DNA from: Paragordius varius
Lineage: Eukaryota > Animalia > Nematomorpha
Assembly: GCA_964247055.1 (NCBI GenBank)
Contig: OZ176054.1
Span: 5,084,001 to 5,148,000 of the forward strand
Direction: 5' to 3'
DNA length: 64,000 nt
Part shown: positions 4,301-51,797 of the stretch, piece by piece
How positions within the stretch are numbered: the first letter of the stretch is position 1
How the letters are laid out: every line of letters begins with the position of its first letter
The notes under the pieces: model-generated
The model's input: only the letters and a program-made list of their open reading frames with translations
What the model was told of the DNA's origin: nothing
Database searches by the model: none
Program-made: the position numbers and the translations under genes

Positions 4301-7300
4301 TTTAACAATCTTCGCGCTTTGATACTTTTTAAATTGGAATATTTTAAATATAAATAGTTAAAGAATTTAGGATTACCTTATAGACAGAGTTTTTTTCTTC
4401 GACGATTTTGTCAAAGGTTTGATACATATTGTTTAAAAGTGTCACCACATCCATAGGTGATATTTGCTTACATATTTGATTGAAATTTGCTATTTCGCTG
4501 AACAAGATCGTAACTGATTCAAAAATCTAAAAACAATCATCAAATTTGCTATTTCGCTGAACAAAATCGTAACTGATTCAAAAATCTTAAAACAATCATC
4601 AAATTTGTAATATGCTATAAAGAGAAAAAATTATGATAGGACTCAAGTTTATATTATATTACTCCCTTATCCCCGTTATTGAGGAAAAAAAGTTTTTTTT
4701 TGCTTTATAAAAATTTAAAAAAAATCGGAAAACTTCACACGTATCTACTGCAGGTTCGCCTTTTCTTAATCGATCAGCCACGGCACGTGGTATCATTTGA
4801 TACAGGAGTTGAACTGTTTTTTGCATTTCCTCATTCAATTGTTTCATATTACTCGATATTTTCTTGCTTTTCAGTTGTTCCTGCCGTAACGTACAAAAAC
4901 CACGATTTTAATTTTGATTACAACATATTTAATATGTATTGAAATTAAGTTTAAAAAAATATGATAACCATATCTACGGCAGCTTTAAGATCCGGATTTT
5001 GTTGAATCCCAGCCAGCAGCACGTCTCTTGAACAGTCGTGCATACTTAAATCATTGATGAAAATACCAAATTTTGTTAAATCATCTAATTCTGACATCCT
5101 ATCATCCCATGTCATAGTAGTTAAATTCAGCGTAGACATACAAATTAAAAATTGTATTAGATAAAACTTACACAGGTGACCCAATAAAGTTGAGGTATTT
5201 CGATTTTTCGATGTAATCCATTTGTCCCTTGAGGTGAATGGATTGGATATTTTGTTCTGTGGCTAAATACATTTTTTGTCCAATTTAATTAAATATATAT
5301 TTATCAAACAAAATGTCGAGCTTACCTATATTATCTACCATCTCTTCCATTTCTGTCATTTGTATTATGGAAGTAATTTCAAACATGTTATTTCTGTGGT
5401 TTATGATCTAGTAAAATATAATAAGTTTTAGGATAAATTTGGATGCTAACCAGTGATAAATTTGAATGGTTCGATAGGTTAGAAAATAAACAGAATTTGT
5501 AAAGAAAAAGCGTCAATTTTAATACAAGCGGCATTTTACCCAAATTTTTATAATTTAATTAATTAATTTAGGGGAAACTAAAGTTAAACTTGCCTTTCAA
5601 AAAATAAGAAACAGCATTGTTTATAAATTATTGTTTTTTTTTGATAACCCTATCCCTATTTTTCCCATCATAAATTTTCAGAAAGTGTGTTCGCCCTTTT
5701 ATTAGTCAATTGTTTAATTCAGACTTTTATTATCATAAAATACCATTTATGAGAGTATTAAATCGTTAATATTAAAAATAAATATTTTTCATTTATAATT
5801 AGTCATTAAGTTTTGCCTGGTCAAAAATGTGACTATTCGGACGGCTAATAATAAAACAAGATCTCATACATTCAATCAATACTAATAAATGTTATATATA
5901 ACCAATTAGCATTTTCGTATATATTCACAAATTAGATATTGAATACTTTGCAACTAGACTTAAATCAATCCAATCCCCATAGAATAATTTTTTGGTTTAT
6001 AATTTTTGGAGAAATGTTACTTTTATAAATGCCACTATAAAAATTGTTGTATACCTTAAGAATGGTCTAGAGCCAGGCTTTTTGGGTAGATGAGCCGTCC
6101 CAAATGCTTTTAGTTTTTAAATATCTTACGGCTCAAAAGTTAAGATGAGATAATTTCAAAACTTAAATAGGAATAAGAAATTGTGAATTATACAAAGTGT
6201 GTTATGACCACGTTTATATGGATAAATTGGGCGCCATATTGACTCATTTGGCCCCAAAACATTGTAATGCATGAAAAACGAATGAAAACTATTGGTATAT
6301 AAATATATGATCAACAACTTTTAAAAGTAATTCTTAAAAAATACTAACAACCTAACCTTGGACCATGTAAATTCTATCGGAGGTTTAAGAATGGTAAATA
6401 TTTCGTCTGCATTTTGACCTACGACATCTGGAATAATTGCCACTAAAGCTGAACCAGCGCTAATCACAGTTAATCCGGCATCAATTACAAGATGAAAGGG
6501 AAAAACATCAAAATAAACTGAGGTGTCAACGATCAATGCATGTTTTTCATGCCTTGAGGGGTTATCGAATGAAACTAAGTAATCGCTGGTGCTTTCAATT
6601 AAAGTGTTGGCAAGGCCATCATTTTCAATAGTATTATCTATTTCTTCAACGACGTTACTGGATGTCGTCGCATCATTTTTTATTTGTTTTGCCATGCTTG
6701 ATGATTGTGTTTTAACACTATGGGATTTATTTTGCAAATTTTTTTGTTCGCGTTTAGAATATAAATTACTCATAGTATCGCTGTTAATTGCTTTCAATGG
6801 AAGGGCTGCGGAATTAGTTAAGGAAAATGTATTATTATCAAAATACAGTCTATAAATAACTGTGTAGGAATCCTTTGAAGCAAATTCTTTGACAGTTGTC
6901 ATCCCGATATCTAATTTATAGAATATTTGTCCAACTTTCTGAATTTGGCCGCGAACATAATGCGAGTAACCCCTTCGTTTACTTTTGTATATAAGAGTTA
7001 GTCCTTCTCGCGTCTCTTCAGAAACGCCAAATGAAGGTGCTTTAAGTCTCGGATAACTAAATCTCAGGTATTCATGCAGGTTATCCAGTCCTACTAAGAA
7101 ATCACGCATTTTTCGACCCAGAACACACAATATCTTTTCGTATCCATAATGGCTTAAGAATGTCACGAAATATACACCGAATTCTTCCATCAATGTATCA
7201 CGGTTTTGACCGGTTATCTCTTCTGTGGCTTTTGCCAACCGAAGTATTAAAGTTTCCGAATAAATTTTATGGATGGAGAAACTTCTATGTTGCAAACCTG

Positions 7301-7385
7301 CTCTCACAATTATCCGATCCCAAACAGATTCTCCAAATTTTAGTTTTAGGTGCTCAGCGATGCTTTCCAATAACAGTCCATACAT
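1336..7385 (-). CDS. Gyc88E: Atypical (O2-sensing type) soluble guanylate cyclase, Gyc88E-like; 10 exons, about 976 aa
   Basis: Exons (minus): 7385-6357, 5407-5326, 5262-5172, 5098-4969, 4880-4734, 4526-4377, 3831-3675, 3522-3413, 3313-3224, 2280-1336; all GT-AG with consistent phases (2931 nt). H-NOX start [32 protein letters not shown] (YxSxR); H-NOBA/PAS HLKGQM and DLSMHD; coiled coil LLYQMIP; cyclase VETIADAY and [20 protein letters not shown]; long low-complexity tail ending CNIL. The symbol denotes the closest recognised family, not proven orthology. Confidence 0.93.
2866..2930 (-). pseudogene. Possible degenerate tRNA-derived SINE head in the last cyclase intron
   Basis: Minus strand GCGTGGTATAGT..TGCGTGTGGCAGGCCAGGGTCGAATCCC has A-box- and B-box-like words (loosely tRNA-His-like) but no complete cloverleaf. 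Confidence 0.25.
4483..4607. repeat. 59-bp tandem duplication spanning the guanylate cyclase intron 5/exon 6 junction
   Basis: Units start at 4483 and 4542 (2 substitutions), with a partial third AAATTTG at 4601. Confidence 0.92.
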
Positions 7386-13043: not shown

Positions 13044-13922
13044 ATGAATTTTAATGAAGATTTATATTCAAAGTTTTTTAAAGAAATACCCCGGTCTATT
13101 TTAAAAAAATCTCCAAGTTTAGAATCCAATTTACAAAATCAAAATTTTTTAACATCCAAAAAAGCTCCCAAAGGTATTCTAAAGAAGAAAAATTTATCTG
13201 AAAAAAATTTGAATGAAGGGGATTTATCTAGAGATTCTTCATATTTCTCATCTAGTGATACAGTAAATGGGGTGAAAATTAAAAGTATTCTTAAGCGAAA
13301 ATTAACTCATGAATGGTGTTCGGATGAAAGCGGTCATGCTTCCTTTGATTCGGAAAAGAAGTACGAGTTTGAACCATCGTTTCATGCTCCTTTAAAAAGT
13401 ATTTTAAAAAACAATACTGACTCAAAAAATACTGATATTCAATTAACCGGAATATTAAAGCGGACTAGCATTTACGACGAACCCGACAAATCTATTCTTA
13501 AACATCGTTCCAGTTTAAATTTTTCAAATGATTTAGTCCAATTATCCTTATCGGCCCGACGCGCATCAAACCCCGAACGCAGATCAAAATCATGTTTTGA
13601 TAATGCCCAATTTCTAGATTCATCCACAACAAACATATTAAGTGGTGACACTAATAATGCTCAGGAATCTCGATCAATACAACAACAACCCAAAAGCATT
13701 TTAAAGAAAAACACAACTAGTGTTGAAAGCAGTGCCACAGTCGAAAACTTTAACACAGCTAATCATTATAATGGTAACCATACTAGTAATTATAATAAAG
13801 ACCGTATCTTCCATCATTTTCGCCTAGGGAATCAACAAATTCGTTTTGATTCACCTCCCAGTCATCCGCCGCCCGGTACCGTTAGGGGTATTTTAAAACA
13901 ACAAAATACCACAGATATCTAG
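13044..13922 (+). CDS. 292-aa low-complexity protein with eight [SG]ILK motifs (putative PP1-docking protein); may start at ATG 13003 via a 26-nt intron, or be the terminal exon of a larger gene
   Basis: 879-nt open frame in DNA where stops are otherwise very frequent. Repeated RSILK/KSILK/KGILK/TGILK/RGILK with Ser/Asn-rich spacers. No globular domain recognised. Confidence 0.7.
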   Translation: MNFNEDLYSKFFKEIPRSILKKSPSLESNLQNQNFLTSKKAPKGILKKKNLSEKNLNEGDLSRDSSYFSSSDTVNGVKIKSILKRKLTHEWCSDESGHASFDSEKKYEFEPSFHAPLKSILKNNTDSKNTDIQLTGILKRTSIYDEPDKSILKHRSSLNFSNDLVQLSLSARRASNPERRSKSCFDNAQFLDSSTTNILSGDTNNAQESRSIQQQPKSILKKNTTSVESSATVENFNTANHYNGNHTSNYNKDRIFHHFRLGNQQIRFDSPPSHPPPGTVRGILKQQNTTDI

Positions 13923-20873: not shown

Positions 20874-20978
20874 ATTTAAAATATCAAAAGTGTAAATCTC
20901 TCAATATATGCAAAACATCTAAATGGAGTCATAATATATTGAATTTCCACAACTAATTAATAGAAATTAAATTATTAA

Positions 20979-21560
20979 CACTTGGATACAACACACTCAT
21001 TTTAGTCCTTCGATTCAAATTGGGGTAGTTGGATACCCCAGGCCTGTTTAAAAACAAATATTTTAAAAAGTGTGGAAGGAATTGAAACCACGGCAAAATT
21101 TTGCACTTATATAACATTAAAACACCGAAATATATAAAAAAATTTATTTAAAAATACTTGATATTAGCTATTTTTAGCTAAAACCGAAAGGTAAAAATTT
21201 CGTCAACGTAACATGTGTCAAATGGTAAAATTAAAAAATAATACAAAATAAACCGCTTTTTCTATTTCTATCAATGTTAAATGTAATTTATATAACATAT
21301 TAGTATTAGTTTTACCCTTAAAATTAAATGAGGACATAATTTTCCAAAAACTTTGTAAAATAAAAATGGCGTCGAAGTAGTTTGAGATGGAACTTTTTAT
21401 ACAAAACAAAATTTTATCAAGTTATTTTGGCATATTTATATAATATTTATCAGGATAGAAGCATAAATTTAAATTGGGACCGTTTCCTTCAGTAGTTTTT
21501 TTAAAATTAAAACTCAAATTTAGTCTGGGGTATTTAGATACCCCAATTTGAATCGAAGTG
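20979..21560 (+). mobile_element. piggyBac-like TTAA MITE, full copy (582 bp)
   Basis: TTAA 20975-78 and 21561-64; CACTTGGATACAAC start, ATCGAAGTG end. Confidence 0.88.
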
Positions 21561-21948
21561 TTAATCTTAAACGATGCAAAATATGCTGCATGTTTTATAT
21601 TTCACAGATAAAATAAATTTTTGATGAAAAGATATTGAAAAAAATGTTTTAGAATTCTCATGGTGCTTTGGGGTTTACGTGTATTTATGAAAGTGTTTTT
21701 ACTTTTAGGAATTTCTGCCGCCTAAAATGGCTAGTTATTCTAAAATGAACGCATGCCGCTTGTGATATTTTTTAATATATTATAATTTCTATCAAAAATA
21801 TATTTTGAGAAGTTCATGGTTTGTTCAACAATTTTTTAGCAAAATTTTGATAAACCGTATTTCAAGATATTTTTAAGGCATTGTGGAAATACTCTTTTTT
21901 TAATTATGATTATGGACAATAAACAATTCTACTGAAAACATTTATTAA

Positions 21949-22486
21949 CACTTGGATACAACACATTCATTTTAGTCCTTCAATTCAGATTGGGGTAGTT
22001 GGATACCCCACCTGTTTAAAATTAAAATCTTTAAAAAATATGAGGGAACCGAAACCATGGCAAAATTTTGCACTTAAAGAACATTTAAAAACCGAAATAT
22101 ATAAAAAAATTTATTCAATACTTGATATTACTTATTTTGAGCTAAAACCGAAAGGTAAAAATTTAGTCAACGTGACATGTGTGAAATAGTAAAATTAGAA
22201 AATAATACAAAATAAACCACTTCTTATATTTCTATTAATGTTATATGTTGTTAAAAAAATTAGCTTATTTTTCAAAAATTTTGTTAAATAAATATGGCGT
22301 CGAAGTAGTTTGACATAAAACTTTTTTCAAAACAAAATTTTATTAATATAATATGGCATATTTATATAATTTTTATTAGGATATACGCCAAAATTTAAAT
22401 TGGAACCATTTCCTTCAGTAAACTTTTACAATTATTAATTTAAATTTTGTCTGGAGTGTTTAGATACCCCATTCTGAATCGAAGTG
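21949..22486 (+). mobile_element. piggyBac-like TTAA MITE, full copy (538 bp), 72 bp upstream of the PRP31 ATG
   Basis: TTAA 21945-48 and 22487-90; same termini and body as 20979-21560. Confidence 0.88.
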
Positions 22487-22558
22487 TTAATTATTATCAA
22501 CCCGATTTTGTACAGTTTAAATATACCAAATGTAAATTTAATTCGGGTCTAACTTCAG

Positions 22559-25142
22559 ATGTCTCTTGCCGATGAGCTCTTAGCCGATCTTGAAGGCGAA
22601 GCAGAGGAAGATTTGTATGATACAATTGTGGAAAAGGAGATCGAAGATATTGATGATGTTGATGATAATGATGTGTCAGATTTAAGGTCAAAAGATTCTG
22701 TCCAAAATTTAGCAAAACTTTGGAACAGTGATCAAGTTAATAATTGTTTTAACATTTATAGCTTAATAATTTAATTAATCAAATTGAAAATAAATGTGCA
22801 CAGCATTCTAATGTTAACGACTTTGAGGGTCAGATAGAAAATCATGATGAATATCAGTTAATTGTTGAAGCCAATAATATGGCAGTTGAGATAGAAAATG
22901 AAATTAGTAACTAATAAAATTAATCAAATAGATGTTATACATAAATATGTTAGGGATATTTATACAAAGCGTTTTCCTGAGTTGGAATCTCTCATCCCGA
23001 CACCCTTGGAATATCTGTTAACTGTTAAGGTAATTATTTTCAAATCATATATATTTAAGGAATTGGGTAATGACATTGAAAAAACGAAAACAAGCACAGA
23101 ACTTCCAAAATTTTTAGCACACGCGACCATTATGGTGTTGAGTGTTACCGCTTCTACTACCCAAGGGTAGGTATCTAAAACTATTTTAAACCTTTTATAT
23201 CACATAAATTAGTCTTATTCTTTTAATAATAAAATTTATATAGAAATCCTCTTGATGACACTGATTTTCAAAAGGTGGAAGAATCTTGTGATATGGTATT
23301 TTTTCCTTTTTTGTTTATTAAAAAAATTGTTATTCTTTCCATCATATTATTAAACATATATAAAGAAAACGAAACTCATATAAAATTTAATATTTTTTTA
23401 TTTTAGGCTATAAAACTGAACGATGCAAAATTAAAGATTTTGCAATATGTGGAATCACGAATGATGTTTATAGCACCAAACCTAACATTCATAGTCGGTT
23501 CTACATGTGCTGCGAAATTAATGGGTATGGAATTTTTGAATATTCTCAAATTATTTAATCCTTAAGATATTAGACCGTGTATGAAAATATAAAAATATGC
23601 GGAAAATTTTTAAATATAATAATTTAAAAAAACTTTGAAATACTTATGTGGCTCAAATCGATATCGCTGTTTTGTATGGGCCGGTTTTAAATAAATTGTG
23701 AAAAAAATTACAATGAAAGTATAAAAACATTTTTTTATAATTGATGATGCTGAACATTTCTAATATATCGTTTTGATTAAGGATTTTCAAAATACTTGAA
23801 AAATAATTTATGTAGGAGGTTAAATCTTAATTGGCAATTTTTTGCATATAAAAAAAACTTTAACCATTTTTAAAAAAAACATCTACAAAAATAAGCTAAT
23901 ATCTCCCGTCCATATACCCACATGAATTAGTCCCCAAATTACAACCATTAATTTAAGCTTCACAAGCTTTTACTTTTATGCAATGTCAAAATTAATTGCA
24001 TTTAACCAAACTTCCCGTTGAAAATTTTATATTTAATATTTCTAGATACCCTTTATGAAAGCTTCTTAAATCATTTTGTCTAATATCAACATTATCGAAT
24101 TACATTAAGATATGGCGGATCACCTCTCTCTTTGAATAATACTTGAATTGGTTTAAAATAGAGTCGCTCTCCGTTTTAAAACTTTTGACAAATTAAAAAT
24201 GTTTATTCTCGAATATATTATATTTTTGGATTGGGATCTCGATTACCAATTTTAACTCCTATTTAAATCGATATTTAACATTATAATCGTATTCAAGGGG
24301 GGAATCCATCGTATTAATAATAATTTTCGAATCTCTTTTTCTTAAATAAAATTATTTCCCAAGATTTATGATTTGTACTACTTGTACGGGTTCTCTTTAA
24401 TGAGGCACATATATCTGCAAGAATTATTTATAGCTTTTTTTATGAATAGGGGCCGCTGGTGGTTTGACCAGACTTTCCAAAATACCTTCAGCCAATTACA
24501 TGGTGATTGGTGCACAAAAGAAGAGTCTTGCTGGATTCTCAAGTGCCACTTTGAATCCACACTTGGGATACATTTATATGAGCCCGATCGTTCAATCGGC
24601 TCCCCCTGTAATATAATTTTTGAATCATTTTTTGTAGGATATTTTTTTAAAAAATATTATTTTATATATAATATAATATGCTTCTGGCTAATCTATTCTA
24701 TTTTAGTTAAAAAATTTCTATTTTTTAGAGCCATGCATTGAAATACATTTTCTAAAATATTTAGTATTTTAATTTTTTAGATATATTATAATAATGATAA
24801 ACCAAAAAATATGTATTATTAGTTCAACAAATCAATATTATTGATGTACTTATTAAACGAATTATTTACAAATAAAAAATAGTATAATATTGATCAAGAA
24901 TTTTTTTGTAGGACATTCGAAAAAAATTATGTCGCTTGGTAGGGAACAAATGTGCATTGGCAGCCCGCATAGACAGTTTTCATCAAAATCGAAACGGTTC
25001 TATTGGGCAAATGTATGTTGAACAAATAAAGAGGTAAAAAATTGTTATGAAAAATTTTTGGTTAAAATATCAAAAAATAAAACTTTTACTCTTGGTGCTT
25101 TTTTATACGATAACTAATGAATGTTAAAATTATTATTTTTTT

Positions 25143-25202
<60 letters not shown>

Positions 25203-27127
25203 AAAAGATTCCTAGATAACTTAAATGTAAAAACACACCTCCACCGAAAAATACTTGGCTTGAAATTTTAATTTTTTTTTAATTAAATTGTAATTAACAT
25301 TTGATTTCTTTATTACTATATAATATTTATATTATTCTTCAAAATGAAAAATAATTTCATATATATTTAATGTTTTTGACCCATTTTGAGTGCGCCAAAA
25401 CATATATAAACTGTTAAGTTTTTGGGAAGTTATACCCAATTTAATTCATAAATTTGCGTGGTTATAAGCATGAGCTCATTAGATTAGAAACACTTTATTT
25501 TTAGGGGCGGAATTTATTTATACTTAATATGAATGTCATTTTTATATGTTTGGTATTTAAAGGCATCTGGATAAATTGCAAGAACCACCCCCCGTGAAAT
25601 TGATTAAACCGCTCCCGGCACCAACTGAAGGTCCTCGTAAACGGCGCGGTGGACGAAAGTATATTGCCATATTAATATATATACTTTTTAATTCTGTAGT
25701 TTCTAAATGGCTATAATTCGTATTAAACCTTTTTATTTTATAAACAACATTAAAAATTCTATTACGGTAATTTTTTTGTTCGAAAGACATTTTTATTTAT
25801 GTCTCAAAGTAGCTAAAACACGTATTATTTTAATAAATTATGGGATATGTGGACTGAGCTGAGACATCTTGTAAATAAATATGTAATAATGATACCATTG
25901 AGGCTACGTTTCATATTTAATTTAAAGTATAATTACGGTTAAAAGATATTTTTAGCACTTATCATTGACACAAAAACACTCTCTTTGTTATATTAACATA
26001 AAAGTTATTTATATAAACCAATTAATATGGGAATTATCTCTAAAATATTGTTTTTAAATATACCATGCTTTGTTAAGGTACCGTAAAATGAAAGAACGGT
26101 TTGGCATAACAGAAATGCGAAAACAAGCGAATCGCGTTACATTTGCCCACATAGAGGACGATGCATATCAAGAGGACCTAGGTTTTAGCCTTGGATCATT
26201 GGGTCAATCTTCGGGAACCGGAAAATTACGAGTTGCACAGGTAATTAAATCAGTTTATAAAATGATTGATTTTCCAGATAAACGGAACTTGAACTCTACA
26301 AAAATGTTTTGTCAAATAAGTTTTGGTTAGGCTTCCATTGTTTTTTAGAGGACAAATGATTGTGAATTTAGTTTTTTTAAAAAAGATGATTTAAACAGCT
26401 TATACATGATTTATTTTCAAGAATTGGAATTAGAATCCATTCCCGAAAAACTGACAAATTTTAGATCCGTTTCCATAGTTTTCAGGTCAAATAATTTAGA
26501 ATTTAGTTCCTTTTCTTAACTAATTTTTTATGTGAATCGATAAGTAAATTAAAAATTATTAAAAGCTTTACTGTTCTTTTTGCCCTAAACAGGGTTTGTA
26601 AAACGCTGTATTGTGTTATTTTACGTAATTTATATTATACATAGATTGACAACAAAACGCAAGTTAAATTATCCAAAGCCCTGCAAAAACAATTGCAAAA
26701 ACGAAATAATATGGGACATTTATCATCGCTGGGGAAAACGCCATCCATTTCATCTACGTTTGGCGCAAACACGGCCGGTGGGAAATCAACCATGTATAAA
26801 TCGGGTATGGGGACGCATTCTTCAAACATTAACTCTCACATTGCTGGAACAGCCTCATCTATTGCTTTTACACCGGCACAAGTTTAAACTTTTTATTGGG
26901 ATTAATTATTTATTTCAAATAAATTTTGTTTTGCTTTGTTAATACGTAAAAGTTGTGAAAAATTTACCCTATAAAGATACTTGACTGCATGCATGTTAAA
27001 TTTTTTAACACATGAAATATAGGGTTTGGAAATTGTTAATCCACTGGCCGCTGAAAAAACTATGGATGATACAACAGCCAAATATTTTAGTCAAAGGAGT
27101 GGTTTTTCAAATTTGGTCAAGAAATAA
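22559..27127 (+). CDS. PRPF31: U4/U6 snRNP protein Prp31; 12 exons, about 525 aa
   Basis: Exons 22559-22735, 22762-22906, 22932-23029, 23060-23166, 23244-23295, 23407-23524, 24450-24607, 24912-25033, 25563-25658, 26078-26240, 26645-26881, 27023-27127 (1578 nt). Motifs MSLADELLADLE, KRFPELESL, VLSVTASTTQG, FIAPNL, KPLPAP..RKRRGGR, EMRKQANR, GTASSIAFTPAQGLEIVNP are colinear with human PRPF31. Confidence 0.96.
25147..25199. repeat. (TA)n microsatellite in PRP31 intron 8
   Basis: About 26 TA units; shorter (TA)n runs near 11600, 14100, 29240, 52145 and 52330. Confidence 0.95.
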
Positions 27128-27370
27128 TTTATTATTATCATTTTTTGCATGTATATGTGTATCAACATAAAAACTAAAATTATATATGTTTATATATATA
27201 ATAAATAAAATTGTTATATTATATACATATGATAAATAAAAATTGAGATTTTTGGTAAGGAATATCTTGATGATTATCAGAGAGAGAGATTTAATTTGTA
27301 TTGCATTGACAAGGCTTATTACTTTTTAGATTGATAAAAAAAATGAGATTTATTGGGTTTTTTCATAGTT

Positions 27371-30300
27371 TTAGAAAGTCCATCCAGTATGTATGTTATG
27401 TAAGTTAACTTGATATTCCAAATACTTCACTAATGGGGTAAAGTACTCGATTAAGGGTTCAATATCATACGTGTTTTTACCGGTCAATAAGTAAAGCAGC
27501 GACTTCCAATCATATGAACCACCCAGTTTCATCATATTCCTAAAATGAATTTAGAAAACACTGTATAATTGAGGGGGCGCCCATATAATTATTTAAAACT
27601 ATAAAGTTATATAAAATATTTTACCAAAGCGTTTTCCCGGCACTCTTAGAATTTTTTAGGTTACATTTATGGAGCGGGATATTTTGCTTGAGGGAATCAT
27701 AGCATAGTATCTAAATTTGATAAAGAAAATGGATATTTTGGTTCATACACCATTTACAAGTTTTTAATAGCTTTTTATTTGACAAAAACCGTAGGTAATA
27801 TAAGTGAAGAAACAGTTTACTGATATATACCTTCAAAAGCTGAAATTGTAAAACAGTTGCTCCGAGATATTCCAAAAAATTTTGATTTTTCACAACGTGA
27901 AATTTGAACGCTGGATCAAGATTGTTTTCCGATCTTGGGACGGGCGGGGATAATCCTTGGTATTTGGCCACCGCTTTCCACCACTCTGTATTGTAATCAT
28001 TTGGTTTTATTTCACCAGTTAATGCTTTATGTCTCCAATCCTCCAAACTGTAAGCAAACATAAACAAAGGGAATTTTCGCAAGGCTTGACTAAGGAGAAA
28101 TTCCATTTCTAAATTATGAAACACAAATATGAATGTCAAAAAATAAATGCCACACATTACAAAACTTAACTAAATTGATAAATCAATCAATTATGATAGA
28201 AGAAATGATTTCGAGTTACTGAAATTCGGATAAATAATTATATAAATCAGGGATTGGAGGCGGAGTTTTTTGGTGATACAAGTCAATTTCTAATCTCTAA
28301 GAGTGGTTTTACACATTTGAAAAAATTAGTTTCGGATTTCCCATTTTAAATGATTTATTAGCTGCAAAAACTTAACAAATAAATATATATATTACTTATT
28401 ATAGAATTTAAAATTTTTTGGGATCATAAAATTTTATTTAGAAACGGTTTAAATCACGTATCTGATGCTAAAAACTATTTCATAACCATTTTTATATTAT
28501 TTGGTAAAAAAAGTTTGTAGTTTTTGTCCTAAAAACGTTTTCGATTCCAATCTCTTATTTCAACCCTCATTAATTTTATATGTGATTGATGAAGGTTCAA
28601 CACACTAAATATATATTATATTGACTAAACCCTGATTCTCATTGAGTATGAATTTAGGCCAGCTGTTGAGATTGCTCCATGGAGAAAGGGCAGATAATGC
28701 GATTGTGTCTCCGACCGATTCATGAAATGCCAAATTGGGTGACATTTGAAGTAAGATTGGCAATTTCTTATACGCCATGTAATAGTATATATGGCCAAGT
28801 TCATGGAACACATTTAGCCACGAGGGATAATTGGCTTTTTGACAAAACATTATCCTGGGTTAAAATACATTAATTATGGAAGAGACATACATATTTTAAT
28901 AGGGAGTATAATGAGATGAGAAATAGATATTTAAATTGCATCACCTAATTATTTTTTATCGGTTTAATGAAATATATAATTCAATCGGGTTACATCGGAT
29001 TCTAAAAATCAGTAAAGAGCTAAGAATATAAATGAAACAGCATAGATAATTAGGAATAGTGATGGAGGGAAATATGTAATTTAAGAAGAAAAGGAGAAAA
29101 TTCAATTAGGGTATTACTATTAATTGGTAAAAAAATATTTAATTTTAAAATTTAATATAATATATATATGTTAAATCATCATTATTTAAGTAGATGATAT
29201 CGGAAAAAAATAAGGAATATTTTTATATACATACATATATATATATATATATATATTATCCAACTCTATATGGTTTGGATATTAAAACTGTTTTATAATA
29301 CTATGTATCCTAAAACATTATTCGTCCTAAAATAACACAATCATGCACACATTCATGTAATTTTACCTATAATCATCACCATCAAACATATTCCATGCAG
29401 AAGGGTAACAAAGGGAATTGTTTGAATAATCAGAAATGTACGATTTGGTCCAAAAATCGTTGGATAATTTCGGCAACCCCATTGATACAAAATATAACTC
29501 TGCTAGTTTGGTTAGATTGTGAATGTGTAAATTTCCTCTCTCCAATAACAGGTTCATCATTTCTTTGTAAGAAATGGAATTCATTTGAAATATTTTGGTA
29601 GAGATTCCTTCCCAATTTTGTCCCCATGCGTTTTCTATAGACAATGTAAATAAAAGTAAGTAATGCGCAAATTGACCCTTTATTCCTTATAATAATTTAA
29701 AAATCTGAAATTTTGTAAATATTTTACACACAAAATGCCAAGTGTTTATTTCTACCTGTAAGTTGTAAAGGGATTTGGCCATTCACAAAATCTTTATCTG
29801 ACATGTGATAGTATTCTTTTAGTTTGTGGCGAACGAAAGCATGTAGTAATTCATACAAGGGTTTAATTTTGACAATTGTTTCATTGATGTATTCGGAGGC
29901 AAAAGTTTTTGTTTCTAATTTTGAAATGAAAAAGGAAATATATTTTAAAAGACATTATCAATACTATATATTTTCAAAATAGGGGGTTTTATTAAAATCC
30001 GATTTTAAATGCATCCCAAAAACTGATACGCATTTTTAATGCTGGCTTGTTGTCCATAACATAGCATTAATATATTGGAATTTATCGTAAATGGAAAGAT
30101 TCATTAACAAACCACTCTTTCTTAATTATTCGCTGTTTTCGGAAATTTTTTATACGAAATTTACGAGAAATAAACTACAACAATTTATCTTTTATCGAGA
30201 AAAACTTCATCAGATTTATCTTATGATAGTATAAAAACCGTTCCCTTTAAATTATTTAATACAGACACTAATGTCAAACACGGTTGATTATCTTTTAATG

Positions 30301-32721
30301 CTATATATGCTTCACGTGATATGTTTGATCGCTTTCTTTCATCTTTGTAGTTCTTTAGGATAGATACGACTTGCATTCTTATGACGTCAGCTATTTTTGG
30401 ATCTATACGAAAGAGACCTGCTTCAACGTTTGAAATAATTTATTCTACTGGCACAACTGAGGGAGAAATAGCAAATTTTAGACCTTTATTTAAAATTGAG
30501 ATCATATGGTCATTAAGCACCATCGATCAAACATATCACGTGAAGAATATATAGCATTAAAACGGTTGATTATCATTGAAAAATACTTTCTTAACTATCA
30601 TAAATGGATCGATTCCGAAAATTTTTAATGCATTCATCCTGAGATTTTACGAAACATATTATAATAACCAAAAAAATTTGAATTGTGATATATATTAATA
30701 AGGTTTAATCTAACATCGGATAAACTCAAAGAGGGATTTTTTCTATAAGCTATAAATAAAAAAGCAAATATTACTTTTGAGAACAAAGACTACCATTTTT
30801 CCTTGTCAAATTACCGGTAATAAATACATTACATTTAAATAGGTTTGTTTTAGGTTTTAAAAACCCTATTTAGTTTTTATTTCATATATTTACATATCCA
30901 ATATATAAGAATGTAATGGTACTTGCTTCATCCATACAACAGGCCTTATAAGCTTGTGCCATTCTCGTAAAGGTTTTTCGCAAAAGTTTTTCGGGACCTG
31001 TTCTGTGCTGGATCCAACTGCATGTTAACGTTGCTCTTTGATGTTCATATAATGGATTTTGAGGTGGTATGTTATATGGGCATACAAAAGATTTTCGTTG
31101 ACCACGTATTTGTGCATAAGCTTTCAGTAAATCACTTTTTGATTGCTGATAGTCCCTGGTAAAAAATATGTATCATAGTTATTGTTTAGGATTGATTCTG
31201 CTAAAAATAATAGCTGCTCTCGATCGCTTGATAAATTACGATCATACACTCACTTATATCACCAAACCTAACTGATTTTACTTTTGAAATTTCTTAAAAT
31301 ATTTCATTACCTTTTAGGGTATATTTACCTCAAAGCGATTAAAATGTATGAAAACATTGGATTTTGTGGTCTATATTGTGTTTAATAAAATAGCCTATAA
31401 ATAAAATAAAGTTTAGGAAGCATAAATAAATATGATACACCCCTGCAAAACAAATAAAAACCAAATAAACACAGAGCAAAAGTTTAAAAGGAGCTTTATA
31501 TTTCCTCCAACGGATAAATTACGATCAAGGAAAATATTCATTTTTATCGCAATTAAATTAACTATCGAAAATCATTCAAGAAAAAGTTTATAATTTTACA
31601 ATTTTTTACAAAATAAATAATATATATACATTATTTTCAGGCATAGAATAAGTTATAAGGGCCCATCGATATATACTTTAATTAATTATATTTTTGATTA
31701 TCAGGACAATTAAATCTCAGATTTGTTTCAGGAAGCGTTTTCAAAATAATTTATATATACAGTTATCAGTCTTACTTTTAAATATAAATAAAAAATGGCT
31801 TATATAAATAAAAAATATATTTTCCGTGTCATGATATTTAATAAGTCCATGTAATTGATTTTCTTTTATCATTAATATATTAATTAATTATAATATATAA
31901 CAATTTAAATTTACAGTTAAATTCACCGTCGAACAATTCAAATTCACCCTAAAATAAATTATATGTTTTTTAAGAAAAATCTTTATTTTTTAATATTTTT
32001 AAAATATTAAATTCTGTTTCAAATTAACACAAAGCGGAAATAATAAACTATGCGGTAAAAATATATATTTCATATTAATGATGAGTTTTATTAGCCCGAA
32101 ACACATAATTTATTTTTAGGGTGAATTTGAATTGTAAATGGTATATTAAAAATTTCCCATATATTTGGTGTTTTTACCGCCTGTACCATATTTATTAATT
32201 ATAATTGAAATATAAAATCAATAGGAATAATATTAAGTACATATAGCTTAAAATCATAGGAAATACCTGTATTCAGCAACATTTTTGTACAAAGGATTAT
32301 ACGGTATTTTGGTGATTAAATTTATTGTGAATGCATCAAGATCTAATCCTTTCCCTAATTTATACAGCTTTATTTTCCAGCGATTATCGAAAATGCGCTT
32401 GTAAGTTGTAACATTTTTTAGGAATCGTTCGTTGGCTTTACTGGGGTCCAATGTGTAATTCCAACTAATGCTCGATATTATCCTTTTCTGCAACAAAGAT
32501 TGTTTTTGATATTCATTTAACAATTCTAAAAAATGAAGATATAATGAAATAATTATCATTTATATATATATATGATGATGTATCTTCAAATATATATGAT
32601 ATATAAAAAATGAGCACATACCTTGGATTTGGACGGAATTCAAGGCTGATAATATATGCCACGGTAGAATTAGATATATACAAGATAATACGATAAAAAG
32701 AGTGTGATTGAAGTAGTTCAT
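27371..32721 (-). CDS. ACE: Angiotensin-converting enzyme-like peptidyl-dipeptidase (M2 family), single domain, signal peptide, no TM anchor; 9 exons, about 591 aa
   Basis: Exons (minus): 32721-32622, 32525-32267, 31155-30923, 29914-29756, 29634-29367, 28854-28631, 28108-27831, 27710-27625, 27539-27371 (1776 nt). Hydrophobic N-terminus; PLYELLHAFVR, NAWGQNW, zinc motif HELGH plus FHESVGD, LDPAFKFH, PLHKC, C-terminal GWTF-stop. Confidence 0.9.
30281..30574 (-). mobile_element. Penelope-like retroelement fragment with a 39-bp inverted duplication, flanked by a 12-bp direct repeat (ACE intron 3)
   Basis: Minus-strand translation MISILNKGLKFAISPSVVPVE*IISNVEAG..IRMQVVSILK..SNISREAYIALK resembles the region upstream of PLE RT (LSKGLNFA..NLTKEE..ALK). 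Inverted repeats 30293-30331 / 30524-30562 (38/39); direct repeat CGGTTGATTATC at 30281-92 and 30563-74. Confidence 0.65.
31933..32135. repeat. Foldback/MITE-like inverted repeat in ACE intron 2
   Basis: ACAATTCAAATTCACCCTAAAATAAATTATATGTTT (31933-31968) is inverted at 32099-32135. Confidence 0.75.
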
Positions 32722-36876: not shown

Positions 36877-39387
36877 ATGCCTAAACTCAGCGGTTGCGCA
36901 AACAGGAAACGAAAAATCCAGGAAGAATTAAAAACAAATAAGTTACGAATAAGTATGAAATCTTATTTAACGAAAATATCTGACCATAGCAATGAAAAAA
37001 GTGTATGCGACACAAACATAACGGTACCCCTTAATAATAATAATAACTTAAATACACCTGAAACCCTAGTTAATGATCCAATAAATAGAGATGAGAATAT
37101 AAATACACCATTAGCAATTCCAAGCGCTATACCTATAGAGTTTAATGATGTAGCCTTTTTAAAATTTACTAATAATAATGTTCCCGTGATATCTAATCAA
37201 CTTCGCACAGAAATGATTATTCGTGGATCTCAACAATTTCAAAATAAATCTAATCTCTTTGAAACAAAAAATCATCGTTCAATGCCCCAATCTTGGTTTT
37301 ATCGACGTGTCGGTAAAAAAGAAGGATTTGAAGTTGAGAGGTCTTGGCTTTTATATTCACCAAAGAACAGATCTGCGTATTGCTTTTGTTGTCTACTTTT
37401 TGATCGCTCTAGTTCTTTACCATCATCTTTTATAACTACGCATGGCTTTAATAAATGGAGGAAAAAAGATAAATTAATTCATCATGAAAATAGCCTCAAT
37501 CATCGTAAAGCATTTACTACGTGGAAAGAGGCAGAAAGAAGATTAATAAATAAAACAGGAATCGATTCTGCTCTAGAATCTCAAATACAATCTGAAAAAG
37601 ATCGATGGCGAAATATTTTACATCGAATATTAGCCTGCATAAAATTTCTAATCACCCAAAATCTCCCTTTTCGAGGACATGATGAAAGTTTAATGTATCT
37701 TGATGACTCAGCACCGAATCCTGGAAACCTTTTATCCTTATTAAAACTTATAGCTCAGTTTGACCCAATAATGGGACAACACATGAAAAACATTGAATCC
37801 CCCAACACTTTATCCTATATTTCACCCAAAATCCAAAATGAATTTATACATCTTTTAGCTTTAAGAGTTAAAGCAAAATTGATCGACGAAATTAAAAAAA
37901 GTAAATATTATGGACTCATATTTGATTCAACGCCAGATATGGCCCACCGGGAACAAATTTCTCAAGTTGTAAGGTATGTGTATATTGATTATGAGAAAAA
38001 GAAAGTTTTCATAAAAGAATCCTTTTTGGGTTTTTTTCAGTTATTTAACAAAGATGCAATGTCAATTGAAAAGGTTATTTTAGAAAATCTAAATATGGAT
38101 AATATTCAGTTATCGAATTGTAGATCTCAATGCTATGATAATGCAGCTGTGATGTCGGGTCACATTTCAGGCGTTCAACAAAGAATTCTGGAAAAAAATA
38201 AAAGAGCAATATTTGTCAACTGTGACAATCATTCCTTGAATTTAGTAGGAGTCACGGTAGCAAAACAAGATGTTATTGTTGTGACCTGTTTCGGTATAAT
38301 TGAAAATATCTATCTTTTTTTTTCACGTTCAACTATAAGATGGGACCTTTTAAAAAATAAACTAAAAAAAACTGTTAAACGTGAGTCTGAAACCCGATGG
38401 AGTGCTAGGATTCAAGCAGTTAATGCCATTGTTGAGGGGATAGATGATTTGATAGAGTTATTAGAAGATTTAAGTAAAAATACTTCAAATACTATTGAAA
38501 CTAGAAGTGAGGCATACGTTTTACTTCAGAGTGTTTTAAATTTCAATTTTTTAACATTAATTTTTTTCTGGCATCAAATACTTAGAAGAATCGATAGGGT
38601 TCAACATAGATTGCAAGATCCCAAAATTAATTTTAATGAAGCATTTAAGGACCTTGAATCCTTAACTATTGAATTATCAGATATTCGGGATCAACTTTGC
38701 GAGGAAGCCATAAAAAAAGCTAAAATTGTATGTAAAAACTGGGATGTTTCTATATCTATATCCCGTGTTAGAAAGCCAAAAAAATTCCCAGGAGAATCAG
38801 ATGGAGTGATTCTTTCCGCAGAAAGTGAAATTTCACGGGTTATGAAGCACGTACTGGATAAATTGCAAAATGAAATGGAAAAGCGATTCTCTAGGCTAAG
38901 AGACGTAAATTCTAAATTTGGATTTTTATTAGATATCAAAAATTTATTGTCACGTAATAACAATAACAATAATGATTTAAAAAATAATTGTAAATCTATG
39001 GGCGAATTTTACAATACAGATTTTAATGGAACAGATCTTTTTATAGAAATTTGTGACTGTAGGATGTTACTCCTAAGTCGAAAAGATGTCGAACCTAAAA
39101 CTCCGTTAGAACTCTTAACCTTTATAATTTCATACGGCGAAGATGTGTTTCCCAATCTAAGGGTGGCACTTCAAATACTTTTAACTATTTCAACATCTGT
39201 CGCTAGTTGTGAAAGGTCATTCAGCAAATTGAAATTAATTTTAACATATATGCGATCGACGATGGGTCAAGATCGTTTGAATGACTTAACATTGTTGAGT
39301 GTGGAAAAAGAAAAATTTAATATGATAGATTTTAATGATATAATTGATAATTTTGCAACATCAAAAGCCAGAAAAATTTTTACCTAA
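36877..39387 (+). CDS. hAT transposase, 836 aa, uninterrupted
   Basis: TTF-type Zn finger (RSWLLYS..AYCFCCLLF..H), DUF4371-like region, catalytic D in FDSTPD, D in CYDNAA, CxxH (CDNH), ETRWS, and hAT dimerization domain SCERSFSKLKLILTYMRSTMGQDRLNDL containing the catalytic E. Confidence 0.95.
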   Translation: MPKLSGCANRKRKIQEELKTNKLRISMKSYLTKISDHSNEKSVCDTNITVPLNNNNNLNTPETLVNDPINRDENINTPLAIPSAIPIEFNDVAFLKFTNNNVPVISNQLRTEMIIRGSQQFQNKSNLFETKNHRSMPQSWFYRRVGKKEGFEVERSWLLYSPKNRSAYCFCCLLFDRSSSLPSSFITTHGFNKWRKKDKLIHHENSLNHRKAFTTWKEAERRLINKTGIDSALESQIQSEKDRWRNILHRILACIKFLITQNLPFRGHDESLMYLDDSAPNPGNLLSLLKLIAQFDPIMGQHMKNIESPNTLSYISPKIQNEFIHLLALRVKAKLIDEIKKSKYYGLIFDSTPDMAHREQISQVVRYVYIDYEKKKVFIKESFLGFFQLFNKDAMSIEKVILENLNMDNIQLSNCRSQCYDNAAVMSGHISGVQQRILEKNKRAIFVNCDNHSLNLVGVTVAKQDVIVVTCFGIIENIYLFFSRSTIRWDLLKNKLKKTVKRESETRWSARIQAVNAIVEGIDDLIELLEDLSKNTSNTIETRSEAYVLLQSVLNFNFLTLIFFWHQILRRIDRVQHRLQDPKINFNEAFKDLESLTIELSDIRDQLCEEAIKKAKIVCKNWDVSISISRVRKPKKFPGESDGVILSAESEISRVMKHVLDKLQNEMEKRFSRLRDVNSKFGFLLDIKNLLSRNNNNNNDLKNNCKSMGEFYNTDFNGTDLFIEICDCRMLLLSRKDVEPKTPLELLTFIISYGEDVFPNLRVALQILLTISTSVASCERSFSKLKLILTYMRSTMGQDRLNDLTLLSVEKEKFNMIDFNDIIDNFATSKARKIFT

Positions 39388-41502: not shown

Positions 41503-42039
41503 AAATATATATGTGTCTTATTGAATTGTATCAGAAATCTTAACAATCATTGATTATCTCGCATACTATCTTATTTTAAAAGGTATAAGTGAGATCGGTG
41601 CATATAAATGAAAATAATTATTTTCGACAGAATAATGTTTGATGTATTAATACTTCATGACCTTTTGGAGTAGTTTAACCCCAGGGCCATTTAAAATGTA
41701 AATATCTTGAAAAAAAAATTTTTTTAGCCACAAATGTAAAAAAATAATTTTTTAAAATATGAAAACAATGTTTAAAAATTTTAGCTAAAATAACTTTAAA
41801 ACAGTAGTTCATTCACCAAATTGAGTTCTGGAATATAAAACTACCCCAATATGTCAGCTAAGCAAAAAAATGAAAAGGTATGAAGCTGAAACTCTTTGCT
41901 CATGTATAGCACAGTCTATAAAATGAAGAGGTATAAAAAATGTTCTAATGAAATATATATAGATTCTGATAGCTAAATGTATCAGGATTATTGTTTAGTT
42001 TCGGTCTTTACAAATGCTTTAGGAAATAATTTAAACTTT

Positions 42040-44430
42040 TCAATCATCGGAACAGACAAAACACCTCCTATGACGGGCGGCATGGGCTTGGACATAAAAA
42101 ACGAGAGAGGAGACAGATTGATTGAATATTGTGCTAACCATCGTTTCTTCATCGCAAACAGCTTTTTTAAACAACCCAAACGACGTCTATACACATGGCG
42201 TTCCCCGTGTGAAAGATACCGTAACCAGATTGACTTCATATTAGGTATGGTAAAATACAAAAGTTCATTTCAAAATGTCAAATGCCTACCAGGATCGGAT
42301 TGCTACAGCGACCACAACCTATTGATCGCCAAACTCCGAATTAAATTACAACTTCCTATAACATCCAAACCCACAAGAACAAGATTAGATTATGATACAA
42401 TCGACGACAAGTTTAGCACCGCTTTATCAAATCGTTTCGATTGTCTTGATCATAATTTCGAAAACTATCAGGATATAAACTTCTTTTGGAACGATATATA
42501 TACAATCTGCCGAGACACAGCCGACGAATTCATTCGGCCTCCCAAACGCAATAAACAAAAAATAAAATTGTCAACCAAAAGTCTCGAGATCGCAGAAAAA
42601 CGTAGAGAATCCAAAATCAAATGCAAATGGGATGAATACAAACAACTAAACAGTGAATTTCAGAAGAGTGCAAGAGAGGACACAAATAAGTATTATGACC
42701 AACTATGTGAAAAATTAGAAACAGACGCCAAAAATAACCAAAACCTCTTTGCCCATGCAAACAATATTATTCCACACAAAAAAGTTTTTTATAAGGGACC
42801 TATGAGAAACGACAACAACTCAATCGTCACTGAAAAAGAAGAAATTCGCAAACTATGGCACAAACATAAACAAACTATACAATGTAAATAACCCCCCAAC
42901 TATTAACGAACTTACTCAACAAAAAGAACCACCTATTATGAAAGAAGAAGTGGAACTCGCTATAAAACACTCTAGCACCGGTAAATCAGAGGGCCACAAA
43001 GACATCCCTACTGAAATAATAAAATACATTCCAATCGATATACTCACCAAATTATTTCAAACCATATTTGAGATGGAAAAAATTCCTGAGGATTGGTGTA
43101 CATCCATTATGATTCCGATTTTAAAAAAGGGTAACCCAGAACTGTGTGACAACTATCGCACCATAGCGCTCATAAACCAGGTGTCCAAAGTTTTTCTAAA
43201 AATAATACAGTTTCGTCTAAATTCCATTCTTGACCCCGAGATATCCACGATTCAGGCTGGTTTTCGAAAAGGTAGAGGATGCCGAGATATGATATGTAAC
43301 ATGAGGTGGATAATCGAGAAACACATCGAATTTAACAAAGAATTGCATATGTGCTTTGTCGATTTTTCCAAAGCATTTGATTCCATCCAGCACAATAAAC
43401 TACGGAAAGCTCTAAAACAACTCGGAGTGTCAACACATTTAATCAACATCATATTTTCAATTTATTCAAATTCCATGGCTGTAGTATCTACACCATACGG
43501 TATATCTGACCCATGTATGGTACAAGTCGGCCTCCGTCAAGGATGCGTTTTATCACCAATTCTTTTTAACGCATACCTGGAGTGCATTATAAGAAGTATC
43601 CCACAAACTTACGGCATCAACGTAGGTGGGAACCTACTTACATCCGTTCACTACGCGGATGATACAGTCTTATTCGCAGACAGTGTAGACACATTATCGC
43701 AAGCCTTGCAAGTGTTTACAACTGAATGCAATAAATTTGGATTAAATATCAATTTCAAAAAAACAAAAGTCATGCAAATAAATCCGGCTCAAACCAATCC
43801 AATAATCCTCAACGGCAACCAGATCGAAACAGTTAGCAGCTACATGTACTTAGGTAGCATTATAAATAATGAGAACAACTCTACGCCTGAAATAAAGCGA
43901 AGAATTGCTATTGCTAAAGCAGTAACTTTTAAATATAACAGGATTTGGATGTCGCATGACATTATACAAACAAAAATCAGATTAATCAAAGCTACAGTTT
44001 TCCCCACATTCATGTATGGGGGGGAAAGCTGGACACTAAAAAAATATGATGAACGTCTAATAAACTCTTTCGAATTATGGGTTTGGAGGAAACTTCTTCA
44101 AACAAAATGGACAGACAAGTTTCAAACACCACCATTCTAAATAAAATTAACCCAGAAATGTCACTTCTTGGCAGCTTAACACGGCAAAAACTCTCCTTCT
44201 TCGGACACATCATGAGATCCAGCTCACTTGAAAAATCACTGATGCTGGGGAAAGTGAGTGGTGCCCGAAAAAGAGGGAGAAGACGAACTCGTTGGATGGA
44301 TAACTTAAAGAAACCAACCAATCATTATCCGACCTAAACACCAAAACCGGAAATCGCAATGAATGGAGAAGCTTTATTTTCAATGTTGCAGTTAGTCGGA
44401 ATCGACTTTAGCAAACAACAACAACCACAA
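42040..44430 (+). mobile_element. 5'-truncated RTE-clade LINE (APE endonuclease fragment plus reverse transcriptase), frameshifted
   Basis: EN motifs NERGDRLIEYC, YTWRSP, RNQIDFI, SDHNLL; RT motifs NYRTIAL, QAGFRKGRG, FVDFSKAFDSI, GLRQGCVLSPILFN, YADD, YLGS. Split over ORFs 41977-42891, 42938-44140 and 44077-44337. (CAA)n tail at about 44413-44428. No clear TSD; 5' boundary approximate. Confidence 0.93.
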
Positions 44431-45410: not shown

Positions 45411-46580
45411 AAATTTTAAAAGTTTTTTCCTTCTGGAATTCAGATAGCTACAAATCATTGAGACTAATAATCTATAATTATTTTTTGATAATTCCCGATT
45501 TTACAAAAAGGCAGGGAAAAGTTTGAGATGGTGCATTTTAAAATTTTTCCTTTTTTCAATATTTGGACATGCGAAAATTAGGATAGTTCCAAAACACGAT
45601 TTAAACGAATAACTGATATAAAATCAAAATTTAATAGGTTTTGCTGATAAAATGTTGCCTGAAAGCTTTTTAATGTTAATTATATACATTTTCAACCATA
45701 ACATTCAAAATTTTATAAAAAAAATTCCGGCCAAAGTGTTTGAGATTTAAAGATTCATTAATATTTTACATTTGTAAAAAATTTATTTCACAATGCGCCT
45801 AAAGGCTAAAGAAAGCATTATTATATTTGGGCAAATACCATAATACTTTTTATCACCATTTAAAATCGCTCTTTAAAACTACCCCAAAAGGTCATGCAAG
45901 GAAATTTAAATAGAGTATTCTATACTACTTTATACTCTGGGGTAAACTAAAATCATCGCGCAAGTAATCAAGTGTTAGATTTTCAAAAAAATTAATATAA
46001 ATGCTATGCCAAATGTTTGCAAAGTCGCAATAGTGCGGATAAAACATTTTCAATACTTCATGACCTTTTTACCTTTTTAACCGCGATGACATATTGCTTC
46101 TAGGATCAATTGAGATAGCAAACCGATTGTAACAGATCTCCACAATTTTATTTCCCAATAGCCCCAAAGGGTAATGTACTAACATTTTTTTCTTTTTTGA
46201 TATTTCATATATATGCTATTATAGATAAAATAAAGAGTTTATTCCTTTATTAGAAGAATTTTTTATGACATAATCTGTATTGAAGTATTATTTCCCCAGT
46301 TAAATTTTATTCAGGCAAATTCAAAATTTTGACTTCTCTGATTATATTATTAAATTTTTCTTACATTTTTTATCATTTAATTACAATTATTTTAAAAGTT
46401 TTTGATTTGATAGCGAATATTATATATTCTCTATAAAAGTGGTGGCCAATAGGCAGTAGATGACATTAATTTAATATTATTATAGACCCACCCATTGGTG
46501 AATAATCTCGTAAAAACAAATGTTTTATTACATATGACGTTTGTAAACAATTAATTGTCACAGGCAAATTTTACAAACCA

Positions 46581-51797
<5,217 letters not shown>

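What the first reader, a model, noticed from the sequence alone, without database searches (positions are those of the whole stretch)
22736..23059. Three consecutive 25-30 nt introns in the PRP31 gene
Seen: colinearity with human PRPF31 (LWDSKM-FAEIMMKIE, IENEL-N-IIHK, TVK-ELGN) requires removing 22736-22761 (26 nt, GTTAATAATTGTTTTAACATTTATAG), 22907-22931 (25 nt, GTAACTAATAAAATTAATCAAATAG) and 23030-23059 (30 nt). Retaining the first two gives premature stops. Of the 36 coding introns modelled here, 4 are 25-30 nt, none is 31-62 nt and the rest are 63-1111 nt. Known: typical animal introns have a minimum near 45-65 nt; 20-30 nt introns are known from ciliates, nucleomorphs and dicyemids, mostly in compact genomes. 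Inference: a separate micro-intron class coexists with long, TE-filled introns, which implies a spliceosome that assembles on much shorter substrates.
Basis: partly seen in the sequence, partly recalled or inferred. Interest (0 to 1): 0.85.

Follow-up and report, generated by a model that had tools for sequence, protein, structure and literature searches.

The report
Tiny 5'-end introns in animal PRP31
The first three introns of an ordinary splicing-factor gene (PRP31) in this AT-rich animal, probably a horsehair worm, are only 25-30 bases long and sit exactly where humans and fish have normal introns; introns this short are published for only two other animal groups, but no RNA could be checked here.

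Summary
Observation confirmed. 22736-22761 (26 nt), 22907-22931 (25 nt) and 23030-23059 (30 nt) are GT-AG segments in an intact 12-exon, 525-aa PRP31 gene. They follow coding bases 177, 322 and 420, the same numbers as the human PRPF31 exon boundaries. A fish and other animals have introns of 59-1354 nt at these sites. Every alternative GT/GC-AG pair fits homologues worse. They are therefore ancestral introns that have shrunk. Of 37 introns modelled in the window, five are 24-30 nt, none 31-62 nt and 32 are 63-1111 nt. All five lie within 500 nt of a start codon, so the class is tied to the 5' end. Sub-30-nt introns are published for myxobolids and Dicyema; 5'-clustered 32-37-nt micro-introns for flatworms. 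A special spliceosome is not shown. This scan noted the same class earlier on several other pieces of this genome. Verdict: new variant of a known kind.

The parts
22559..27127 (+). PRP31 (PRPF31) gene, 12 coding exons, 525 aa; exons 22559-22735, 22762-22906, 22932-23029, 23060-23166, 23244-23295, 23407-23524, 24450-24607, 24912-25033, 25563-25658, 26078-26240, 26645-26881, 27023-27127
22736..22761 (+). Micro-intron 1, 26 nt, phase 0, after coding base 177; possible branch A at nt 17 (TTAAC)
   Evidence: same site in human, fish L002 (78 nt) and L003 (59 nt)
22907..22931 (+). Micro-intron 2, 25 nt, phase 1, after coding base 322; possible branch A at nt 17 (TTAAT)
   Evidence: same site in human, L002 (83), L003 (63), L004 (416), L006 (528)
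23030..23059 (+). Micro-intron 3, 30 nt, phase 0, after coding base 420; 3n and stop-free
   Evidence: same site in human, L002 (96), L003 (64), L006 (1354)
23167..23243 (+). Intron 4, 77 nt, first ordinary-sized intron, 608 nt from ATG; later introns are 111-925 nt
   Evidence: human boundary c.527
22532..22558 (+). Candidate 27-nt 5'-UTR intron ending directly before the ATG (GTAAAT donor, CTAAC, TTCAG); unproven, other donors or a trans-splice acceptor are possible
   Evidence: fish L002 also has AG directly before ATG
21942..22491 (.). MITE-like element with terminal inverted repeats, ending 67 nt upstream of the PRP31 ATG; second copy at about 20972-21565
46730..46758 (+). UAP1 intron 1, 29 nt, phase 2, 149 nt from ATG
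46896..46919 (+).
   Evidence: composition test weak

Best explanation
These are genuine ancestral U2-type (GT-AG) spliceosomal introns that have been shortened to 24-30 nt, selectively near the 5' end of genes, in an animal whose other introns are 63 to over 1000 nt. Shown: positions, boundaries, need for the reading frame, size gap, 5' restriction in this window. Inferred: removal by the major spliceosome through intron definition, with a branch A about 7-10 nt before the AG (lariat loop about 17-21 nt) and no pyrimidine tract. The 5' restriction is most simply explained by cap-proximal, co-transcriptional help to spliceosome assembly (the cap-binding complex promotes U1 and tri-snRNP recruitment; own knowledge), which would let weak, sterically tight introns be tolerated only there. 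This last step is a hypothesis.
For: Frame restoration and best fit to homologues. Seven intron positions share the numbers of human PRPF31 boundaries: 177, 322, 420, 527, 697, 855, 1073. Same sites in fish and other animal loci with 59-1354-nt introns. 47 of 51 genomic ORFs that break off after exon 3 do so with Val (GTN), a donor read through at the intron-3 site. Cores are 4-20% GC against 37% coding. Two more such introns in UAP1. 5 of 5 within 500 nt of ATG against 2 of 32 (Fisher p about 5e-5, introns not independent). Precedent for splicing of 22-27-nt introns in animals (PMC13644364) and 5'-clustered micro-introns in flatworms (PMC4040987, PMC6530080).
Against: No RNA or raw DNA reads were seen. 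Only four genes, and only two carry micro-introns. The ACE-like gene has 96- and 1111-nt introns within 500 nt of its ATG, so 5' position is not sufficient. Branch motifs are weak in such AT-rich DNA and absent in two of five. The cap-proximity mechanism is untested.
Confidence: 0.88

Rival explanations
1. Real introns, but poorly spliced or regulated by retention. Retention of 1 or 2 would truncate PRP31 (a possible feedback on a splicing factor); retention of the 3n stop-free ones would add 10 or 8 residues. Compatible with the main reading, but it changes what they do.
For: Microsporidian tiny introns splice at about 25% median efficiency (cited in PMC13644364). Two of five here are 3n without a stop. 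Donors are weak: 0 of 5 have G at +5.
Against: PRP31 is an essential tri-snRNP protein (own knowledge); three inefficient introns in series would cut output sharply. No homologue in the alignment carries the intron-3 insertion as protein.
Confidence: 0.2
2. Assembly artefact: the middles of ordinary introns were lost in the assembly.
For: No reads could be laid on the locus.
Against: It would have to hit five non-repetitive introns in two genes, all 5'-proximal, leave both splice sites intact, give 24-30 nt each time, and leave 525 codons error-free.
Confidence: 0.03
3. The true introns are longer and use other GT/GC-AG pairs (for example 22736-22803, 68 nt), or the short exons are skipped.
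For: In-frame alternatives exist; the 68-nt option has a CAG acceptor in a moderately conserved stretch.
Against: All alternatives score lower and delete conserved residues; the 68-nt option removes a segment present in the aligned homologues. Skipping exon 2 or 3 gives stops. The short pairs match ancestral boundaries to the base.
Confidence: 0.04
4. A dedicated or remodelled spliceosome (variant snRNAs, lost or trimmed factors, an SPF45-like route) handles this class separately from the long introns.
For: Clean size gap between 31 and 62 nt; no pyrimidine tract; the human A complex covers 79-125 nt and human short introns use SPF45 (10.1101/784868); Stentor has altered branching factors (PMC9505925).
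Against: No snRNA gene in the window, so nothing could be tested. Splice-site ends look alike in both size classes. Myxozoans keep U2AF and a canonical U2 (PMC13644364).
Confidence: 0.25

Closest known systems
Ultra-short introns of myxobolid myxozoans and Dicyema japonicum (PMC13644364)
   Same: Under 30 nt, GT-AG, donor reduced to about GTa, little or no pyrimidine tract, at ancestral positions, adjacent to one another.
   Different: There they dominate the genome (median 22-27 nt). Here they are 5 of 37, the median is 286 nt, the genome carries MITEs, hAT and LINE elements, and they are limited to gene 5' ends.
Flatworm 5'-clustered micro-introns (Gyrodactylus modes about 32 and 58 bp, PMC4040987; Opisthorchis 37 and 90 bp, PMC6530080)
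   Same: Two size classes; the short class sits at intron positions 1-2, clusters, and loses the pyrimidine tract, alongside long introns.
   Different: The short class here is 24-30 nt, below those modes and at or under the 30-nt limit. Probably a different phylum (not confirmed by me).
Ciliate tiny introns (Stentor 15-16 nt, PMC9505925; Paramecium about 25 nt, PMC5014332 abstract)
   Same: AU-rich GT-AG introns with a very small predicted lariat.
   Different: Unicellular hosts in which all or nearly all introns are tiny; no kilobase class beside them.
Human ultra-short introns, 43-65 nt, a subset SPF45-dependent (10.1101/784868)
   Same: Short introns with truncated pyrimidine tracts coexisting with long introns.
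   Different: About twice as long, rare, and not described there as a 5'-restricted class.

Membership tests
U2-type spliceosomal intron | GT...AG ends whose removal restores the conserved reading frame | tested here: met
U2-type spliceosomal intron | Position and phase shared with orthologous introns | tested here: met
   human boundaries from PMC7065041; loci L002-L006
U2-type spliceosomal intron | Branch-point adenosine motif | tested here: inconclusive
   TTAAY at -7 to -14 in 3 of 5; common by chance in AT-rich DNA
U2-type spliceosomal intron | Excised from mRNA through a lariat | not testable with these tools
U12-type intron | RTATCCTT donor and TCCTTAAC branch site | tested here: not met
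   neither motif is in the five sequences
Myxobolid/dicyemid-type ultra-short introns | Length of 30 nt or less with reduced GTa...AG signals | tested here: met
   24-30 nt; 0 of 5 with +5 G; no pyrimidine tract
Myxobolid/dicyemid-type ultra-short introns | Genome-wide shortening (median under 30 nt) | tested here: not met
   median 286 nt over 37 introns in this window
Flatworm-type 5'-clustered micro-introns | Short class concentrated at the first intron positions, clustered | tested here: met
   PRP31 introns 1-3 and UAP1 introns 1-2; four genes only
Flatworm-type 5'-clustered micro-introns | Short mode at 32-37 nt | tested here: not met
   24-30 nt; none at 31-62
Nematomorpha (host taxon) | Closest homologues are horsehair-worm proteins | tested here: inconclusive
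   three homologue searches found no close relative (best 50-55% over long stretches) and ten ORFs are absent from the collection; GC about 27% with many DNA transposons fits the published Gordionus figures (26.9% GC); the assignment rests on earlier AI notes

The most novel reading that the evidence does not exclude
A third animal lineage with introns under 30 nt, and one in which a single cell runs two splicing regimes: a cap-proximal route that excises 22-30-nt introns only within about 500 nt of the transcript start, beside ordinary splicing of 60-nt to kilobase introns. That would make the minimum intron size depend on position in the transcript.
Probability: 0.35. Interest if true: 0.8.

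Novelty: new variant of a known kind. Interest (0 to 1): 0.62.

Why it matters
A 2026 survey of 51 animal genomes found introns under 30 nt only in myxobolids and Dicyema, both with genome-wide shrinkage. A lineage where such introns coexist with kilobase introns and occur only at 5' ends separates 'tiny intron' from 'compact genome'. It gives a within-gene control for asking what sets the lower size limit of splicing: the machinery or the distance from the cap. In practice, default minimum-intron settings would mis-annotate the 5' ends of housekeeping genes in this animal.

Tried and rejected
An alignment of separate exons with a homologue (A1) was poor and was not used as a query. Three homologue searches (sGC exon, UAP1 exon, PRP31 exon 11) and an exact look-up of ten ORFs found no close relative, so there is no sister-species locus or transcript; by the operators' note these blanks say nothing about full-length kin. 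Rfam found nothing in the window. The Atlas gave nothing for ORF 13044-13922. No human contig was fetched: two hits (P0102, P0108) look human-like and were not looked up, human exon boundaries came from a paper, and I did not scan metagenome contigs because the conserved peptide could have returned human DNA. Rejected: pseudogene (525 intact codons), longer alternative introns, exon skipping, U12-type introns. Literature searches found no report of short introns in nematomorphs, but the library lacks most subscription journals.

Full report
Observation. Removing all three gives an open frame. Keeping the first gives a stop at codon 72, and keeping the second alone a stop at codon 110. The third is 30 nt, in frame and stop-free, so the frame does not require its removal. 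However, the read-through ORF aligns to human PRPF31 with exactly a 10-residue insertion at that place. Its core (8% GC against 37% for coding DNA) scores more intron-like than every coding window of equal length.

The gene. With homologues from the representative search I modelled a complete 12-exon PRP31 gene, 22559-27127, 525 aa, with no disablement and 51% identity to the best full-length homologue. Intron lengths in order are 26, 25, 30, 77, 111, 925, 304, 529, 419, 404 and 141 nt. Enumerating every in-frame GT/GC-AG pair around each of the three sites, the short pair fits 20 homologues best each time. The closest competitors are a 68-nt version of intron 1 and a 36-nt or retained version of intron 3. 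Skipping exon 2 or exon 3 gives stops.

Ancestral positions. The introns follow coding bases 177, 322, 420, 527, 579, 697, 855, 977, 1073, 1236 and 1473. Human PRPF31 has boundaries at c.177, 322/323, 420/421, 527, 697/698, 855 and 1073 (PMC7065041): seven identical numbers, including all three micro-introns. A fish-like genomic locus, L002, has introns of 78, 83 and 96 nt at the three sites. An unidentified animal, L003, has 59, 63 and 64 nt. L004 has 416 nt at site 2, and L006 has 528 and 1354 nt at sites 2 and 3. Among database ORFs that break off after exon 3, 47 of 51 continue with Val, the GTN codon of a donor read through. These are old introns that have shrunk, not new insertions.

The rest of the window. 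It holds a soluble guanylate cyclase (- strand), an ACE-like peptidase (- strand), UAP1 (+ strand), a hAT transposase, a LINE remnant and many MITE-like repeats. It matches an 8-9-residue gap against mammalian UAP1, and genomic ORFs of other animals show an acceptor at the same glycine. Its composition test is weak. Of 37 introns, five are 24-30 nt, none 31-62 nt and 32 are 63-1111 nt (median 286). All five lie within 500 nt of a start codon, against 2 of 32 longer ones (Fisher p about 5e-5, but the introns are not independent and only four genes count). Those two exceptions are the ACE-like gene's first introns (96 and 1111 nt), so a 5' position allows but does not force shrinkage. The PRP31 ATG is preceded directly by TTCAG, as the fish ATG is by an AG. 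A 27-nt GT-AG segment with a CTAAC motif fits there, and a MITE-like element ends only 67 nt upstream; this fourth candidate is unproven. The long introns are mostly not filled with repeats detectable within the window.

Signals and mechanism. The micro-introns have GT(A/T)A-type donors, none with G at +5 (8 of 30 longer introns had it), an A/T-rich 3' part without a pyrimidine tract, and TTAAY motifs that would put a branch A at nucleotide 17 in introns 1 and 2 (weak evidence in such DNA). The most likely reading is excision by the major spliceosome by intron definition, with a small lariat. This is inference, with precedent: myxobolids splice 22-27-nt introns while keeping a canonical U2 and U2AF (PMC13644364), and Stentor splices 15-nt introns with the branch A at position 10 (PMC9505925). 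For the 5' restriction I favour help from the cap-binding complex in early assembly (own knowledge; untested). A dedicated machinery remains possible but is not shown.

Comparison with what is known. A September 2026 survey of 51 animal genomes found introns under 30 nt only in myxobolids and Dicyema, with medians of 22-27 nt for the myxobolids; its main text does not mention nematomorphs. Flatworms have the same architecture as here, a short class at the first intron positions beside longer introns, but with modes of about 32-37 nt (PMC4040987, PMC6530080). The finding combines the size of the first with the layout of the second, and fails one defining feature of each. I found no paper on short introns in horsehair worms.

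Limits. The joined spliced model was left out of all search tools; exons were searched by reference. My homologue searches did not reach a close relative, so the horsehair-worm assignment rests on earlier AI notes of this scan and on a compatible GC content and transposon load. Those notes report the same intron class on several other pieces of this genome; they gave me leads (the 5' bias, the flatworm comparison), not independent evidence.

Verdict. Real feature, very probably spliced introns (0.88). New variant of a known kind. Interest 0.62, rising to about 0.8 if RNA and a genome-wide analysis show a position-dependent minimum intron size.

Noticed in passing
   Followed up: yes
window 22532-22558 (+) and 46539-46563 (+): Possible 5'-UTR micro-introns (27 nt before PRP31; 21 or 25 nt before UAP1), or trans-splice acceptors.
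   Followed up: partly
window 13044-13922 (+): 292-aa ORF with repeated KSILK/GILKK motifs (resembling PP1-binding SILK motifs, from memory); no Pfam or Atlas hit; may be a single-exon gene or a last exon.
   Followed up: partly
window 1336-7385 (-): Soluble guanylate cyclase of about 976 aa with a 1-kb first coding exon, a roughly 55-residue insertion after the H-NOX domain and a long low-complexity C-terminal tail; no micro-introns.
   Followed up: partly
window about 27350-32721 (-): Divergent ACE-like M2 peptidase with a signal-peptide-like start and an HELGH zinc motif, convergent with PRP31; first introns 96 and 1111 nt.
   Followed up: partly
window 36877-39387 (+): Intact 836-aa hAT transposase ORF (DUF4371 plus dimerisation domain), possibly recently active.
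   Followed up: no
window 41977-44337 (+): LINE-type reverse transcriptase remnant split over several ORFs.
   Followed up: no
window 20972-22491, also about 10.5-13 kb and 36.2-36.6 kb: Abundant roughly 550-nt MITE-like family with about 34-nt terminal inverted repeats; one copy ends 67 nt before the PRP31 start codon.
   Followed up: partly
window 26645-26881 (+): PRP31 exon 11 carries about 25 extra Ser/Gly/Thr-rich residues in the C-terminal region against the best homologue; no database protein shared three 5-mers with it.
   Followed up: partly
window about 4520-4600 (-): Short tandem duplication of the acceptor and start of a guanylate cyclase exon, giving two possible 3' splice sites.
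   Followed up: no
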